Shown piece after piece: positions 1 through 6,334 of a stretch of 64,000 nt of DNA. The DNA comes from Magallana gigas (lineage: Eukaryota), in NCBI RefSeq assembly GCF_963853765.1, contig NC_088855.1, positions 558,001-622,000 of the forward strand, given 5' to 3'. The notes beneath the pieces are model-generated. The model ran no database searches. It was not told where the DNA came from and saw only the letters and a program-made list of their open reading frames with translations. Numbering within the stretch: position 1 is the first letter of the stretch; each line of letters begins with the position of its first letter. The position numbers were made by a program, and so were the translations under genes.

Positions 1-377
1 ACACTATTTAGATGATTAAGGCAGCTACCGAATCCTATGCAAATACCGCTGTACCTAAGGGAAAGAGGGGAATCTCCACTTATGTCTGGGATTGCTGTAA
101 CAAAACACTGACCATGGCTCCGACCTGATAACCTGTCAATTATGGACCAGCTGCTGTTATGAATCTACATGAATGATGTTAGTCACTATGTATAGTAAGT
201 TTGACAGACATGCTAGTTAGTAAATGACTTTTACCAAGACCCCAGGGATCAAGGGATCACACGTCCCAACACATGCCTAGGGAGCATGTCCACACAAGGG
301 GATCATGCCCACATATGCCTAGGATTCATGCCTACATATGCCTAGGAATCATGCCCACTGTAGCAAACTCCTCCTAC

Positions 378-3300
378 CTTTATTTGTTACTAGCTGTTTC
401 AGACCAGATTTACATAGCGTCCTCAAGAAAACGTGTTCTAACTGTGATTTTTCTGACTTGTTGAAGTGTGTCACATTGTTAGCAATACTGGTTTTGTTTA
501 CTAAGGTGAAATTTTCAGCCTTCACATTGGAAGGAACAGGAAATGTCAGAAGACCTGTTAATGATATGGAAGCAATGAGAGATACAGCGAGATAATTGTA
601 TATGTAATGAGACACCAGGATGTGTGAATTCAAAATAGATGAATGAGATGGTGTCGCTTCGTTTGAGCATAATTTGTTATATCCTTCAAGTTTACAACAT
701 GTAATGAAGTTACAGGGAATGAAAATCACTTCTCTGTAAGTGTCAATTCATTAGAAGCTTGTCCGCTATAACCATGTTTCACTGTAAATGTATTGAAGAG
801 AAAATAAAACATACAGTGAGATAAATGTATTCATAGTGAAATAAAAACAAATTCAATAGGATAGTTCTAGGTAGATACACATATGTGCAAATGCATTGGA
901 AACAATGGATATGTAAAGAGATGAATGAAATAGAGATTAGCATAGAAGTTGTTATCAACAAGTGGATACTGTGTAATTAATATTGTTACAATAAGACCTT
1001 CAGAGATTACAGTTTACAATAAAATGTAAAAGAACATTATAGATGAAGTGTGATATTTGTAAATGCAGCGTAAGTATTTTGAATGTACTATGTTTATACA
1101 AAATCAATAATCTATAATTATATGAAATCATCTTTAAAAAAAATTTCCATTGCACCCTGTTTAAGGACAAAAACCATTATAAAACGATTATCTTGCACGT
1201 CATTATTAATTTTAAAGAATGAACATAAGCCAATATTCATTCACACTACTCAGAGTAATGAAAAGTTGAGCGTTCTAGAGTCAAGTCTCTCTAAGACAAA
1301 CCCTAGAGTCAAACAGTGCCATCCACTCCTTCTCTCGTTAATTTCACAAGAAAAGTGCTAGGGGTTGGATCTCCCTTATTATTCAAACATCTATTCCATC
1401 ACAAGCAACATATTGACTTAAAATATTTGAGGTTGATAAATGTTCAAATTTGAAAGATAATAGTCTCTAAATATTTAAGGGCTCATGATTATGAACTACA
1501 ATAACAACAATAAAGAGACTATTTCCTATTTTGATTTCCTGATAAAATGTTCAAATTTGAGAGGTAATGGTCAATTAATATTTATACAATAGCCTTTGAT
1601 AAGAAACAACAGTACAGCAGACCGTTTCCTACCTTTGATTTCGTCTTTGTTCCCCAGTAAGGGACCCAGGGTCTCTGCCCAGATTTTATCTCCACTCACA
1701 TCAGCCATATCAGCCACGGTCAGGGGCCAGACTACGGTGGGGGGAGTCTGGTACAGCTAAAAAATGCGAAACAAATTGTGAGACTCAGATCAAATATTTG
1801 GATATCTCAAAGTTTTTAAACAGTTTCCGAAGTTTGACTGTACTTATCAAAATTGAACTTGCATATTTTATACAAGGTGAACATTTACATATAAGCAGGG
1901 TTCAAAATAAAATTTGTCATCTAATAGAAAGAGATATTTATTTGTCCCTACACCCAGGATTCTATCCAGTTGATACTGAAGTAAGTGTGCAATGTGGTAC
2001 TGCGATGGTCCTTTCTCATACAGAAATACAGCCCTCTTCATCGGTTTCTCCAGGTTTGCTAGCTCGACCTCAAAACGAGCCCCCACCGTAGAGGTCAACT
2101 GGAACTTGTCAACTCCTGTGTGTCTAGTGATGCGCGACATCTTTACTTTCAGTTTCCAATTGTCCTCTGACACACCTAACAAACAAAGAGCGACCACATG
2201 ATCATTTTCTACCTGATTTTTAAAAGTCATGGAAAGTTTTACTCAGAATGTTGCTAACTATATCCTTTTTTAACAGCATTGAGAATATATGGATTCGTAA
2301 GCATTGACACAATTTAATGAAATCATCAAATTAAACATAAAAATACATTTGTTCCTAAAACACATATTTTCAGGAAACTTCTTTCTATTGCTTTTCAAGA
2401 AAGTTCAAAATGAAGAGAAAACCTTTGAGTCCTAGATGAGTCATTAATCGCCTTTCTCTCGAGATTCTGGCCTCTGTGTTTGCATTCCACGTTCTAGCTC
2501 GGCACTCTGACACCATCATCTCCGCAGATGCTGTGGTCTGGGTGTTAACTGCATTTACTGGAACCCCCTGTACTGAGGCTGCAGACCGGATGAACAGTGT
2601 GGCTCCAACGTTAGGCTGAGGTTTCCCAGTGCCAGAATTTTTTGCCACCATCGTCATCAGAGCTGTGAATTTGAAAAAGGGAAACAACTCTTAAAGAAGC
2701 AAACTTTACAATCCTATTTTCTTTTTCAAAAACTTAGTTTACTCTTAAATTACAAGACTAAATTGTCAGGAAAATATTGCTTTACTCTATATATTATTCA
2801 AATCAATGAAAGGAAGGGATTTAATTTCTTTAAATTCTCAATAACATTTCTTGGAATATGTTCCAGAGAAGTTATTATTGAAAAAATAAAATGTATCAAA
2901 TGTAGTGGCTTAAAATAGAAAAAAAATATACTGATAAGTTAAGGTCAAAGGTCATAAAAGAAATTTACACTTTCTAAGCCCCAATGAATACAGAATAAAA
3001 CAAACTGAATGTGTCATCACATGTGACTGACAACTCACAAAAAGAAGCGTACGGTGGATTATCTACAGACATGTGTTTGAAAGGACAAAAAGTGAAGTTG
3101 TGATAAAATGTACCGTTGATTTTCAACAGACATGAAGTTGTGACAAACTGTACAGTTGATTATCAACAGACATGAAGTTTTACCATCTCCATCAGGATTG
3201 GAAGCAAACAGGACGAAGGAGCGACACTGAGGGTCGGTATTACAGAAGTTCTTGGCCTCGCCCAGGCTGTGGACGGTGATGACACATCCCCACAGGACAC

Positions 3301-6300
3301 GCGACGACTGGCATGTATAGTCATACTGGCCGGGGAAGTTGGACTGTTCAATCCTCTGGTAGTCCCCACTCTGTAATTTCAATGCAGTCAATGAATTACT
3401 TCATATGTGTTGAGAAAACATTATACTGCCTATATTTTCAATGATCTAAACTAGACAGAATGCATGACTAGACATATGTAGACCTAACATCTCCCAAAAC
3501 ATCCTCCCAAGTATAGGACATGAAAGCTTAGCAAAGAACGGGAACCTTTTGTGACTCTGACACCATTTATTATTCTCTTATTGGACAGACAACAAGACTT
3601 AAACTTGAGACCTTTTTCTGTGGTAGGATGCGGTTGGCCATGATCTCCTCCTGGCGGTGCTGATCCTCCTGGCCGTGCTGATTCTCCTGGCGGTGCTGAT
3701 CTGCGTGGTGTCTCTCTACTCTCTCCTGTACCATCTCAACCTTAACATGACCCTGACCTTCGTTAGCATCGTAACCAACTCCGACTTGAGCTTAAGGGTA
3801 CAAAGAACAACATCATATTTATTATCAAATTGTACTCAATGTAAATATACATGTAGAAATCAAATATTTAATATGCATCATTCCTGCTAAGGTTTGTACA
3901 GGGAATATTGGATAAGGATAAATACAGAGAGACTCTCTAATGGGTAAAATTCACTCTAATGTATAATAAAACAGGGTTAAAACATGATAAAAGAATCTTC
4001 TATGATTTGTGATACTAGTATAAGTTATTTTCCCTACTCATTGTATGTTTTTTCTCACCTCGCTAAGCACCAAAGACTAAATAGACAACTGGCTTTATAA
4101 AATGTATTTATGTTATACACAATACCAAATAATGGGGGGTTCTATATTGGCATACTTTTCTATTTGATATCTCAATTTGCACATTTTTCAAAGCCCCTGA
4201 CATTTAAAGAGAGCCTTACCTGTTTCTGTCTGCATCCCTTTCAGTTTTGGAATGATTTGATTGGCTGTGATGTTGAGCAGCATAATGCTTTGTTTCAGTT
4301 CATTAATACCCCGAGATATAGCAGAGGGAGGATTACTCAACAGCTCATTGAACAGCGAGGCTCCCACCCTCTGCATATTATTTTTAGCATTCCAATCTTT
4401 ACAGCGACCACTTTCACAGGAAATGTCTGAAGGAAAAAAAATTCTATATTTAAGGATAACAGTTCTTCAAAATACATGTATAAGTATATTATGTAATGTA
4501 TTCTGGAGCATATTTATATATATAAAGTGCTTTCTGCAGTTAGAATTTTTTTTTGAATTTCTAGCAAATATTTTCACTTGAATTGCAGGAAAAAAGGTCC
4601 TGTTGCGCTAAGTAAAAAAACTAAAATTAAAAAGACAACTTCAAAAACTTACGTGCTAATGACGCAGTGGGGATTTTACAATCAGCATCGGACTGACACG
4701 TCTTCTCATCCAAGTTAACATCATCGAGGTCCACCAGTTTTAGTTTGTTCTCTCTGGTCGTGACAAAATCGTCCATTCTTATTCCTAGGAGCTCTACGCT
4801 ACCTAACGGACTTTCCTCTAAGTACTTCAACATCTCCGCCAGCTGAATGGCAAACTGTTGGAAAATTTATAAACATACAAAATGATTTTATATTATGATT
4901 CCCATTATGTATGACTTTGTGTAACACAACAAACTGTTTAAAAATTTATGAACATACAAATTGAAAATTTCATATTATGTTTTATGATATATTCAAATTA
5001 TGATTCCCTTGATTTATGAAATATTTTTCATCTTTGGCAGTTTGCACACATTTTTCAATATCGGTATAAAAATGAAACAAAGGGGCATGGTCACAATTTT
5101 GGTCAAAATAATTTTTTCCATTTAACATTTACAATGCTTCTCCGAGGCAATTTTAATAGGCAACTAAAATTTGAGTGTCATTTGTTGAGTTATATGTAAA
5201 CATGTAAATGTAAACAAAACTTTTGTTTACATTTTAAATGTTAAAGTGAAAATTCCAGTTTTAGACCTATCATGAATGTGTTAAACATTAGGAACTGTTT
5301 ATTTATGCTAAAAATGAATAAAAAGATAGACAAATCAGCATAAACAAGATTTTACTGGTATATTGAACCTATATAAACAAAAACAGGGCCAAGCCTTGTT
5401 TACATGACAAAGAATAGCAAGCCCAGCCCCTGTATCTTGCTAATAACTCTACAACTGACTCTCAATTTCATTTGATCATTAGAAATGCATCACTAAAGCA
5501 TTGTAAATAATAGATACAGAAAAATAGAATTTGACCAAAATCGTGACCATGCCCCTTTAAACTTAAAATGCTGACCCTCATGCGAGTGTCCCACTGTGTG
5601 TATGACAGGATCCCTGGGGTGACCGGGGTCCCCGCCTCTAGCACCAGTAACAGACCCTTCTTCTTTATATCGTAGTTAATGCTGTCCCCCCGGATACAGA
5701 ACCCGATCAGATTGACGATGCCTGGGTGTTTCAGGATGGACAGAAGGAGAATCTCCCGCATCAGGTGATAGTTCCCCATGTTGTGACACTTATCCGCATC
5801 GTAAACTCTCTTCATGCATTTGATTTTGGTTTCCTGATCATTCCCCTGACTCTTAATCACGACCTCCGTATTCTGTGGACGTAGTATGGCACGATCTACG
5901 TACTTCTTGCTGCCTACTTTTATTGCTTGTGAGATTCGAATATAATCAATGTCTTTGCAAGAGAGCCCACTCTCATAGCCCAAATCTGACAACTGAATTT
6001 TAATGTCGTATGCCATTTCATCCGCGTCTTTGGCAGTTCCCCAGTTGTCTGGATACAGATCCGATAACAACCTCCTTAAACGTACTGTCTTATCCTCATC
6101 CATAAGCGGGACGTCTTGGTTTACAGAGTACTGATTTGGATTCACGATTTGTTTCACTTTTTGGCGCATCTCCACCACATTGAGGCGGTGCCTCTCTTCT
6201 TTGTTCTGTCTGTCTGACTTGCTGTCGCCATCGTTGACTTGTTTATAGGTGAGGATCACTCCAATGATAGTGAATATAAAAAGGAAGGCTGTCCAGCCGG

Positions 6301-6334
6301 ACCGATACCGAAGTCTACACCTCATTGTTCTCAT
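378..6334 (-). CDS. Type II membrane secretory-pathway kinase-like protein: PKDCC/VLK-like domain fused to a C-terminal Fam20/Four-jointed/GASK1-like domain; 3' end not resolved
   Basis: Phase-compatible GT-AG exons: 5576-6334, 4653-4854, 4220-4426, 3612-3790, 3184-3370, 2423-2662, 1952-2175, 1633-1756, 378-554. The signal-anchor is WTAFLFIFTIIGVILTY. PKDCC-like segments: EVVIK, REILLLSILKHPGIVNLIGFC, YLEESPLGSV, KLVDLDD..DEKTCQSDADC, CESGRCKDWNAKNN, YTCQSSRVLWGCVITVHSLGEAKNFCNTDPQCRSFV. The downstream segments YQLDRILG|LYQTPPTV and GNKDEIKG|LLTFPVP resemble Fam20C HLDRILDFRRVPPV and GKPDQIEGSLAAFLP. The donors at 3611 (gtctca) and 2422 (gttttc) are weak. Confidence 0.8.
5081..5556. mobile_element. 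Non-autonomous TIR element (MITE), Kolobok-like, copy 1
   Basis: Inverted termini aggggcatggtcacaattttggtcaa and ttgaccaaaatcgtgaccatgcccct, with TTAA at 5557-5560. The same family occurs at 56780 and 58235. The superfamily is inferred from the TTAA flank and purine-purine ends. Confidence 0.75.

What the first reader, a model, noticed from the sequence alone, without database searches (positions are those of the whole stretch)
378..6334. Two unrelated secretory-pathway kinase folds fused in one chain: PKDCC/VLK plus Fam20/Four-jointed/GASK1-like
Seen in sequence: the exon carrying the PKDCC-like C-terminus (ALMTMVAKNSGTGKPQPNVGATLFIRS, exon 2423-2662) has no stop. It splices in phase through three more exons giving YQLDRILG|LYQTPPTV...GNKDEIKG|LLTFPVP. 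Established knowledge: vertebrate PKDCC ends at the equivalent position. The LDRIL-x-x-x-x-PP and EG/KG-(S/L)L-x-x-F/P motifs characterise Fam20C, FJX1 and FAM198/GASK1. Inference: one >760-aa type II Golgi/secreted protein joins an ecto-tyrosine-kinase fold to a Fam20-clade fold. I know no description of such a fusion. It is of interest in a probable shell-forming animal, where Fam20-type kinases act on matrix proteins.
Basis: partly seen in the sequence, partly recalled or inferred. Interest (0 to 1): 0.78.

Follow-up and report, generated by a model that had tools for sequence, protein, structure and literature searches.

The report
Oyster PKDCC-like/Fam20-like double kinase-fold gene
This oyster gene really does encode one secretory-pathway protein joining a PKDCC-like kinase fold to a Fam20-like kinase fold; the same layout occurs in a sponge, molluscs and amphioxus, no paper we could search describes it, and both halves lack the usual catalytic residues.

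Summary
Nine minus-strand exons (6334-378) are all AG/GT and in phase. RNA contigs from three studies plus raw stranded reads confirm every junction from exon 1 to exon 8.

Most transcripts splice from 1633 to a paralogous exon "9b" beyond the window's left end, so 9a and 9b are mutually exclusive.

The full proteins are 859 aa (9a) and 876 aa (9b):
- signal anchor;
- PKDCC-family kinase-like domain;
- PAN-like module, where true PKDCC ends;
- a 315-aa C-terminal domain.

The C-terminal domain has a Fam20 fold:
- AF2 model: pLDDT 91.
- VIA-align: Z 19-21 to all nine Fam20 entries, against 13.8 for the next fold.
- Sequence profile against PDB: the top six hits are all Fam20, best E 1.7e-5.

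- The N-domain is a paralogue of PKDCC, not its orthologue. Amphioxus has both. The long family lacks the HRD aspartate.
- The Fam20-like domain lacks the Fam20 catalytic residues, so both halves are probably pseudokinases.
- The architecture is ancient (Oscarella, molluscs, Branchiostoma), and nothing ties it to shell formation.

No description was found in the searchable literature. I rate it a new variant of a known kind.

The parts
5576..6334 (-). Exon 1. ATG at 6334, with a second in-frame ATG three codons on. Encodes the signal-anchor helix, a disordered stem and the N-lobe of the PKDCC-like kinase-like domain, including the beta3 Lys (VVIKS) and the alphaC Glu.
   Evidence: weak Pkinase and PK_Tyr hits; donor 5576 joined to 4854 in X1, X9, X3 and X21; helix at 8-34 of P0001.
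4653..4854 (-). Exon 2. Holds the catalytic-loop region of the kinase-like domain. It reads LLGIRMDDF where PKDCC has LLDFRPRQF, so the HRD Asp is replaced by Gly. It also holds the DFG-equivalent VDLDD.
   Evidence: PIP49_C, 2.3e-5; (joints 4854/5576 and 4653/4426).
4220..4426 (-). Exon 3. The Cys-rich C-lobe of the PKDCC/FAM69-type domain.
   Evidence: PIP49_C, 0.011; PIP49_C 1.1e-13 on the full protein; joints.
3612..3790 (-). Exon 4. A disordered His/Gln/Glu-rich linker containing an 18-nt tandem repeat (3646-3701) that varies in length between individuals.
   Evidence: period 18, 3.1 copies. (18 nt left out at 3666 in X1). P0001 is 12 aa shorter here. pLDDT is below 50 at 389-435.
3184..3370 (-). 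Exon 5. The PAN-like Cys module shared with the C-terminus of true PKDCC.
   Evidence: PAN_4, weak, 0.03. (colinear with the PKDCC C-terminus; four near-invariant Cys). (joint 3184/2662).
2423..2662 (-). Exon 6. Contains the end of the PAN-like module (where PKDCC proper stops), a short linker, and the first helices of the Fam20-like domain (ECRART...RERRLMTHLGLK). The junction of the two modules therefore lies inside this one exon.
   Evidence: (model residues 1-45 align to the Fam20 N-terminal helices). (joints on both sides; almost no depth in intron 6).
1952..2175 (-). Exon 7. The Fam20-like N-lobe strands and the alphaC-type helix, with the QYHIAHLLQYQLDRILG motif.
   Evidence: aligned to QRHNAEIAAFHLDRIL of Fam20A, B and C; joints 2175/2423 and 1952/1756.
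1633..1756 (-). Exon 8. LYQTPPTV...GNKDEIK, the continuation of the Fam20-like N-lobe and hinge.
   Evidence: the donor at 1633 goes mostly to off-window exon 9b and, as a minor form, to 554.
378..554 (-). Exon 9a, the minor member of a mutually exclusive pair. It encodes the segment from the hinge to the (lost) catalytic loop of the Fam20-like domain and carries four N-X-S/T sequons. Its partner 9b, which has no sequons, lies beyond window position 1.
   Evidence: joint 552-1631 only in X3; depth 13-25 against 85-203 in exons 7-8. (K1Q7J8 contains 9a then 9b; P0001 has 9a only; P0155 has 9b only). (9a and 9b share 17 of 60 residues; sequon counts).
1..377 (-). Intron after exon 9a. The gene continues off the window to exon 9b and the last 93 codons.
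   Evidence: no open frame. (P0001 has 93 more residues after 9a). (23-bp tandem repeat at 269-358).

Best explanation
**What is shown.**
- This is one expressed oyster gene, almost certainly from Magallana gigas.
- It encodes a single-pass type II secretory-pathway protein of 859 or 876 aa.
- From N to C it has a signal anchor, a disordered stem, a PKDCC-family kinase-like domain, the PAN-like module that ends true PKDCC, a short linker, and a 315-aa Fam20-fold domain.
- The gene belongs to an old animal family found in a sponge, bivalves, gastropods and amphioxus. That family is a sister lineage of PKDCC, not PKDCC itself.

**What is inferred.**
- Both kinase folds are probably non-catalytic.
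- The N-domain keeps the beta3 Lys, the alphaC Glu and (in molluscs) the DLDD metal site, but has lost the HRD aspartate.
- The Fam20-like domain has lost the two alphaC glutamates, the FKPMK lysine and the DRHH aspartate. It resembles the pseudokinase Fam20A.
- The most likely role is a lumenal or extracellular nucleotide- or ligand-binding scaffold or allosteric partner for active secretory kinases or their substrates.
- Mutually exclusive exons 9a and 9b swap the surface around the dead active site of the Fam20-like domain. Exon 9a adds four N-glycan sequons.
For: - **Gene model and splicing:**
- **Full-length transcripts:** P0155 and P0001.
- **One-exon junction:** the two modules meet inside exon 2662-2423.
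- **N-domain:** PIP49_C at 1.1e-13. It is colinear with seven PKDCC proteins, including the PAN-like end. The full model also matches tyrosine-kinase structures.
- **C-domain:** profile against PDB hits Fam20A at 1.7e-5, Fam20B at 5.7e-5, ceFam20 at 0.002 and FAM20C at 0.006, with three colinear stretches. The AF2 model has pLDDT 91.1 and pTM 0.91. Foldseek's top 28 hits are all Fam20. VIA-align gives Z about 20.
- **Catalytic positions:** tabulated. PKDCC's HRD-His is Leu and its DFG is DLD (bioRxiv 10.64898/2026.02.19.706771). Gln at the ceGlu213 position is part of why Fam20A is a pseudokinase (PMC5865150).
- **Taxa:**
- **Tree:**
- **Exons 9a and 9b:**
Against: - Loss of activity is inferred from sequence alignment only. 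Coordinates could not be inspected.
- The Fam20 catalytic-loop mapping rests on an ungapped extension of a weak HMM stretch.
- POMK, a relative, was called a pseudokinase and proved active (PMC5142810).
- Molluscan members conserve an Asp at the +5 position of the catalytic loop and keep DLDD. The C-domain keeps an Asp two residues after the DFG-Asp position in 15 of 17 members.
- The full-length AF2 model gives no confident contact between the two folds (pTM 0.44), so cis-regulation is not supported structurally.
- No partner, ligand or location has been measured.
Confidence: 0.72

Rival explanations
1. It is an active, atypical kinase, possibly a dual one. The N-domain would phosphorylate using a relocated catalytic base, namely the conserved molluscan Asp at +5 of the catalytic loop together with the intact Lys, Glu and DLDD. 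Alternatively or additionally, the Fam20-like domain would use its conserved AD-x-AF Asp and invariant His.
For: The beta3 Lys and alphaC Glu are invariant, and DLDD is kept in all molluscan members. An Asp is kept in 15 of 17 C-domains. There is precedent: POMK/SgK196 was thought inactive yet is a glycan kinase (PMC5142810, listed; PMC5865150).
Against: The HRD Asp is absent in all six long-family members aligned, while it is present in all seven PKDCC proteins. Amphioxus and sponge members have also lost DLDD, so catalysis cannot be the family's conserved function. The C-domain lacks four Fam20 catalytic residues at once.
Confidence: 0.22
2. The fusion is an artefact: read-through or chimeric assembly of two neighbouring genes, a PKDCC-like gene and a separate Fam20-like gene.
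For: Pfam and database annotation see only the N-terminal domain. The public K1Q7J8 model is visibly wrong at exon 9.
Against: The module boundary lies inside one exon, 2662-2423. Single RNA contigs in three studies span exons 3-8 or 1-8 at even depth, and raw reads cross the joints. No cluster of molecule starts was seen (table 6). The same continuous ORF occurs in at least 16 species from sponge to amphioxus.
Confidence: 0.02
3. The C-terminal domain is only a generic atypical protein-kinase-like fold (PI4K-II, CotH or HipA type), not specifically a relative of Fam20, Four-jointed or GASK1.
For: The Pfam Fam20C model gives no hit. Identity to Fam20 structures is only 13-17%.
Against: Fam20 entries stand 6 Z units above PI4K-II and 10 above CotH and HipA, and cover about 280 of 315 residues. 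The sequence profile alone picks out only Fam20 proteins among 177,635 PDB sequences, and the matching stretches are colinear. FAM198 is the only recurrent weak Pfam family.
Confidence: 0.04

Closest known systems
PKDCC / VLK (vertebrate lonesome kinase, SgK493), secreted tyrosine kinase
   Same: - Signal anchor.
- A Cys-rich kinase domain of the PIP49_C/Pkinase type.
- DLD in place of DFG (in molluscs).
- The same PAN-like Cys module after the kinase domain; PKDCC ends exactly there.
   Different: - It is a separate clade. Amphioxus has both a 491-aa PKDCC-like protein and the 875-aa long form.
- The HRD Asp is replaced by G, N, K or L.
- It carries about 315 extra residues forming a second, unrelated kinase fold.
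Fam20A (pseudokinase activator of Fam20C), with Fam20B/C and C. elegans Fam20
   Same: - Same fold: Z about 20.
- A shared H-x-A-x5-HLDR-L-x4-PP helix and strand.
- A similar LIHxD-type strand and a C-terminal Cys-containing helix.
- As in Fam20A, the ceGlu213 position is not acidic; it is Gln in the oyster.
   Different: - Only 13-17% identity.
- It also lacks the second alphaC Glu, the FKPMK Lys and the DRHH Asp.
- It is shorter: 315 aa against roughly 350-430 ordered residues in the solved Fam20 chains.
- It was never found as a stand-alone protein in our searches.
- It is covalently tethered to a PKDCC-like domain.
GASK1A/B (FAM198A/B) and FJX1 / Four-jointed
   Same: They belong to the same Fj/Fam20 superfamily of Golgi proteins. 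FAM198 is the only Pfam family hit repeatedly, in 3 of 17 members with best E 0.02. According to the review PMC7948968, no kinase activity has been ascribed to Fam198A/B.
   Different: All hits are below Pfam's threshold. No solved GASK1 or FJX1 structure appeared among the matches, and no sequences of them were in hand, so placement within the superfamily is open.
Tandem kinase-pseudokinase proteins such as JAKs (from general knowledge, not tested here)
   Same: Two kinase-type domains sit in one chain, with at least one degenerate domain. This suggests regulation in cis or scaffolding.
   Different: Here the two domains are of unrelated kinase lineages, both look degenerate, they are lumenal or extracellular, and no cis contact is predicted (pTM 0.44).

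Membership tests
PKDCC/VLK | Kinase domain homologous to PKDCC / PIP49_C | tested here: met
   PIP49_C at 1.1e-13 on P0001. A phmmer search with exon 1 retrieves named PKDCC proteins. The full model matches tyrosine-kinase structures.
PKDCC/VLK | PAN-like Cys module directly after the kinase domain, forming the C-terminus | tested here: not met
   The module is present and colinear (four near-invariant Cys). It is not the C-terminus: 315-340 more residues follow.
PKDCC/VLK | Catalytic-loop Asp (L-L/V-D in PKDCC) and DLD metal site | tested here: not met
   The Asp is present in 7 of 7 PKDCC proteins and in 0 of 6 long-family members (G, N, K, K, N, L). DLD is kept in molluscs and lost in amphioxus and sponge.
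PKDCC/VLK | Orthology: falls inside the PKDCC clade | tested here: not met
   The PKDCC clade (coral to vertebrates) has SH-aLRT 99. The molluscan long clade has 100. Amphioxus has a member of each. Deeper order is unresolved.
PKDCC/VLK | Tyrosine kinase activity on secreted proteins | not testable with these tools
   This needs a biochemical assay.
Fam20 / Four-jointed / GASK1 superfamily | Fam20-type atypical kinase fold | tested here: met
   AF2 model pLDDT 91.1. Foldseek's top 28 hits are all Fam20. VIA-align Z 19.2-20.9 with 272-286 residues aligned; the next fold scores 13.8.
Fam20 / Four-jointed / GASK1 superfamily | Sequence-level homology | tested here: inconclusive
   The profile against PDB gives Fam20A 1.7e-5, Fam20B 5.7e-5, ceFam20 0.002 and FAM20C 0.006, and the stretches are colinear. 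However, Pfam Fam20C gives no hit and FAM198 is only sub-threshold in 3 of 17 members.
Fam20 / Four-jointed / GASK1 superfamily | Fam20 catalytic residues: Glu at the ceE213 and ceE218 positions, the FKPMK Lys, the DRHH Asp and the DNG Asp | tested here: not met
   The oyster residues at these positions are Q, H, L, C or A, and M, and the positions vary across the family. Only the His of RHNAE is invariant. An Asp two residues after the DNG-Asp position is kept in 15 of 17 members. The mapping is by alignment only.
Fam20 / Four-jointed / GASK1 superfamily | Secretory-pathway targeting | tested here: met
   There is an N-terminal hydrophobic helix (8-34 of P0001) and no other TM segment. The protein has many conserved Cys and N-X-S/T sequons. 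The location itself is inferred.
Fam20A-type allosteric pseudokinase | Binds and activates an active Fam20C-type kinase | not testable with these tools
   Only the loss of the acidic residue at the ceGlu213 position is shared.
Mutually exclusive exon pair | Tandem homologous exons of the same phase, with one used per transcript | tested here: met
   Exon 9a is 177 nt and 9b encodes 61 codons, so both preserve the frame. They share 17 of 60 residues. K1Q7J8 lists them in the order 9a then 9b. P0001 has 9a only and P0155 has 9b only. RNA joints support this. The genomic position of 9b is off the window and was not read.

The most novel reading that the evidence does not exclude
The long form is the ancestral state of the PKDCC lineage. 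Early animals would have had a lumenal tandem protein in which a Fam20-type pseudokinase was tethered to a PKDCC-type kinase domain as a built-in allosteric or substrate-docking partner, a cis version of the Fam20A-Fam20C pair. Vertebrate VLK would be a derivative that lost this domain. Oysters would additionally tune the partner surface by switching between exon 9a (glycosylated) and exon 9b.
Probability: 0.2. Interest if true: 0.8.

Novelty: new variant of a known kind. Interest (0 to 1): 0.6.

Why it matters
**A possible new branch of the family.** Reviews list the Fj/Fam20 superfamily as six human members: FJX1, Fam20A/B/C and Fam198A/B. This finding adds a deeply divergent branch that standard domain models do not see, and it is always fused to a PKDCC-type domain.

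**A physical link between the two secretory kinase lineages.** One lineage is Ser/Thr- or glycan-directed (Fam20) and the other is Tyr-directed (PKDCC). This protein joins them in a single chain that dates back to sponges.

**A natural test case.** It can be used to ask how pseudokinases work in the secretory pathway, and whether Fam20A-style allostery is older and wider than thought.

**An annotation fix.** It corrects public annotation: the K1Q7J8 model, and the "uncharacterized" or "FAM69 domain-containing" labels.

**What it does not show.** Nothing found here links the gene to shell formation. The family was not found in vertebrates, so direct biomedical relevance is limited.

Tried and rejected
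**Searches that gave nothing useful**
- A Pfam scan of single exons gave nothing for exons 7-9.
- A single-sequence phmmer search of P0001 against PDB gave only weak canonical-kinase hits to the N-domain. The family profile was needed.
- The look-up of encoding contigs for the Saccostrea protein P0153 found nothing on record. The genomic order of 9a and 9b therefore rests on the K1Q7J8 model and on transcripts.
- A word-indexed search with the C-domain profile for stand-alone relatives of 173-551 aa found only fragments of the same family. This is a weak negative because of the word index and the huge database size.
- Earlier notes of this scan hold nothing on this locus.

**A model that did not resolve the question**
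- The full-length AF2 model gave confident domains but pTM 0.44, so it says nothing about inter-domain packing.

**Ideas rejected**
- A two-gene read-through artefact.
- Termination at the intron-6 stop near 2385.
- An independent start at exon 7.
- Orthology with VLK.
- A link to shell matrix: no evidence, and K1Q7J8 appears in no searchable paper.

Full report
**1. The observation**

On the minus strand, nine exons all have AG acceptors and GT donors and join in phase:
- 6334-5576, 4854-4653, 4426-4220
- 3790-3612, 3370-3184, 2662-2423
- 2175-1952, 1756-1633, 554-378

They give an open frame of 766 codons that is still open at 378.

**2. Transcript evidence**

The 6-kb stretch is held by many oyster RNA runs. 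Four were laid: Logan contigs of three RNA studies (X1, X9, X3) and raw stranded poly-A reads (X21).
- All seven joints from exon 1 to exon 8 are in contigs. Six of the seven are also in raw reads; the exception is 3612/3370.
- Single contigs span exons 3-8 (X1) and 1-8 (X3) at even depth.
- First mates lie on the + strand, which fits a minus-strand mRNA in a standard stranded library.
- Intron 6, which holds the read-through stop near 2385, has depth 0, 5.3, 0 and 0, against more than 100 in the neighbouring exons of X1 and X9.
- No pile-up of molecule starts or ends was reported.

**3. A correction: exon 554-378 is an alternative exon**

After the donor at 1633, the deep contigs of X1 (235) and X9 (121) continue into letters that are not in the window. 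Read in sense, those letters give G-LLTTSMPRVI. Only one X3 contig (depth 9.2 against 30.6) joins 1633 to 554.

Database proteins explain this:
- P0155 (876 aa, 83 member sequences from transcript assemblies) equals window exons 1-8, with 6 differences in 708 aa, followed by an exon "9b" beginning LLTTSMPRVIQ.
- P0001 and P0151 (859 aa) carry the window's exon "9a".
- The UniProt model K1Q7J8 of Magallana gigas strings 9a and then 9b together. Its 9a is identical to the window's, so the window is M. gigas or a very close relative.

The two exons compare as follows:
- They are homologous, sharing 17 of 60 residues.
- Both preserve the reading frame.
- 9b is the ancestral type. Pinctada, scallops and C. 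virginica isoform X1 have it.
- 9a occurs in Saccostrea isoform X2 and evolves faster: 35 of 58 identical between genera, against about 81-90% in the rest of the domain.
- 9a carries four N-X-S/T sequons (three in Saccostrea). 9b has none.

**4. Architecture**

Positions below are in P0001 numbering.

| Region (P0001) | Feature |
|---|---|
| 8-34 | Signal-anchor helix |
| 31-74 | Disordered stem |
| about 120-390 | Kinase-like domain |
| 389-435 | Disordered linker, encoded by an 18-nt repeat that varies in length |
| about 438-522 | Beta-rich PAN-like module |
| 525-545 | Short linker |
| 545-859 | C-terminal domain |

- Pfam sees only PIP49_C (1.1e-13) and weak Pkinase/PK_Tyr on the N-domain.
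- Seven named PKDCC or PKDCC-like proteins were aligned: two fishes, gecko, amphioxus, hemichordate, sea urchin and coral. Kinase domain and PAN-like module are colinear in six of them; the sea-urchin protein stops before the PAN-like module.
- The end of that module and the first helices of the C-terminal domain are encoded by the same exon (2662-2423). The fusion is therefore not a matter of exon choice.

**5. The C-terminal domain has a Fam20 fold**

- **Sequence profile.** A 17-sequence alignment of the domain (A3) was searched as a profile against all PDB sequences. The top six hits were only Fam20 proteins: FAM20A 1.7e-5, Fam20B-like Hydra 5.7e-5, C. elegans Fam20 0.002, human FAM20C 0.006 and zebrafish Fam20C 0.04.
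- **Colinear stretches.** Three stretches match in order: the RHNAE...HLDR-L...PP helix and strand, the LIHxD strand, and the C-terminal Cys helix.
- **AF2 model.** AF2 without templates gave pLDDT 91.1 and pTM 0.91.
- **Foldseek.** The top 28 PDB hits are all Fam20, with E from 8e-9 to 1e-4. The next hits (PI3K, CtkA) are at 8e-3.
- **VIA-align.** Z is 19.2-20.9, with 272-286 of 315 residues aligned, for all nine Fam20 entries. This compares with 13.8 for PI4K-II, 12 for CtkA, 9.9 for CotH and 9.6 for HipA.
- **Pfam.** Scanning every member found only one recurrent family, FAM198/GASK1, in 3 of 17 members at sub-threshold E 0.02.
- **Full-length model.** It matches both Fam20 structures and canonical tyrosine kinases such as FES, CSK and ABL. 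There are two different kinase folds in one chain.

**6. Catalytic residues (inference from alignments)**

N-domain:
- The beta3 Lys and the alphaC Glu are invariant.
- The catalytic-loop Asp is present in 7 of 7 PKDCC proteins. In PKDCC the HRD-His position is Leu and the DFG is DLD.
- In the six long-family members aligned, that Asp is replaced by G, N, K, K, N or L.
- DLDD is kept in molluscs but is EVGR in amphioxus and QVSQ in the sponge.

C-domain:
- The ceGlu213 position is Gln in Fam20A, which is part of why Fam20A is a pseudokinase (PMC5865150). It is Gln in the oyster and variable across the family.
- The ceGlu218 position is His or Tyr.
- The FKPMK Lys is a hydrophobic residue.
- The DRHH Asp position is C, A, G or T.
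- Only the His of RHNAE is invariant. An Asp two residues past the DNG-Asp position is kept in 15 of 17 members.

By canonical criteria both domains look like pseudokinases. There are caveats. POMK is a precedent for a misjudged "pseudokinase".

**7. Distribution and relationships**

A phmmer search with exon 1 against 1.84 billion cluster representatives found 152 hits. At least a dozen of them are proteins of 870-995 aa that share the whole architecture and end in the same VLY motif.

Their sources:
- Oysters, pearl oyster, scallops, unionids and ark shell.
- Gastropods: Haliotis, Patella, Aplysia, Elysia, Bulinus, Candidula, Babylonia and Bradybaena.
- Branchiostoma (875 aa, several isoforms).
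- The homoscleromorph sponge Oscarella pearsei (884 aa).

All are labelled "uncharacterized", "hypothetical" or "FAM69 protein-kinase domain-containing".

A tree of the N-terminal region (38 rows, quick IQ-TREE) gives these clades:
- A PKDCC clade from coral to vertebrates, SH-aLRT 99.
- A molluscan long clade, SH-aLRT 100.
- An amphioxus plus sponge long pair, SH-aLRT 94.

The order among them is unresolved. Amphioxus has both a short PKDCC-like protein (P0124) and the long form (P0044). The long family is therefore an old paralogue of PKDCC. Whether it is the ancestral form is open.

**8. Literature**

- The FAM69/PKDCC bioinformatics paper (PMC3696010) discusses PKDCC and FAM20 as separate Golgi kinase groups.
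- The two Fam20 structure and evolution papers (PMC5865150, PMC7948968) list FJX1, Fam20A-C and Fam198A/B as the family and make no mention of a fused form.
- Keyword searches and the accession K1Q7J8 found no description.

Absence from this library is not proof of absence.

**9. Mechanism**

Shown:
- A single expressed gene.
- The domain order.
- The two folds.
- The alternative exons.
- The conservation across phyla.

Inferred:
- A type II Golgi or secreted location.
- Loss of catalysis in both folds.
- A scaffold or allosteric role by analogy with Fam20A.
- Glycosylation of exon 9a.

The AF2 full-length pTM of 0.44 gives no support for a fixed cis contact between the two folds.

**10. Verdict**

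- Novelty: a new variant of a known kind, meaning a previously unrecognised Fam20-superfamily branch in a new fused architecture.
- Interest: 0.6.

Noticed in passing
window 5000-5600 (intron 1): RNA-contig depth runs from the hundreds into the thousands here (mean up to about 5,700; 21,000 at one site), on both strands. There are many loose ends at 5350, 5389, 5530 and 5560-5562 and several internal skips. This looks like a high-copy interspersed repeat, perhaps a MITE or other transposon fragment, and not part of the gene's mRNA.
   Followed up: no
window 601-800 (intron 8, around 666-705): A second short high-depth patch (230-466 against about 11 around it), with loose ends on both sides and a common T>G at 685. 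It is probably another dispersed repeat.
   Followed up: no
window 3646-3701 (exon 4): An in-frame 18-nt tandem repeat (3.1 copies) encodes the HRQE-rich linker. Run X1 lacks one unit, and the transcript protein P0001 is 12 aa shorter here. This is a length polymorphism in a disordered linker.
   Followed up: partly
window 3093-3179 and 269-358: There are tandem repeats directly after splice donors. One has a 40-bp unit (2.2 copies) just downstream of the exon 5 donor. The other has a 23-bp unit (4.1 copies) about 20 nt downstream of the exon 9a donor. Whether the second affects 9a usage is unknown.
   Followed up: no
UniProt K1Q7J8_MAGGI (P0152): This public gene model for the locus starts 55 residues late and includes both mutually exclusive exons 9a and 9b in series. 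No transcript assembly seen here has both.
   Followed up: yes
Haliotis asinina isoforms X1 and X2 (P0009, P0168): The two 943-aa isoforms are identical except for the last 50 or so residues, which are homologous but different. This suggests a second, independent case of alternative homologous exons within the Fam20-like domain, here at its C-terminal helix.
   Followed up: partly
window 1201-1400 (intron 8): Raw poly-A reads reach depth 4, as high as in the exons, and X3 has a 310-nt contig at 1155-1464. This may be an intronic transcript or a repeat.
   Followed up: no
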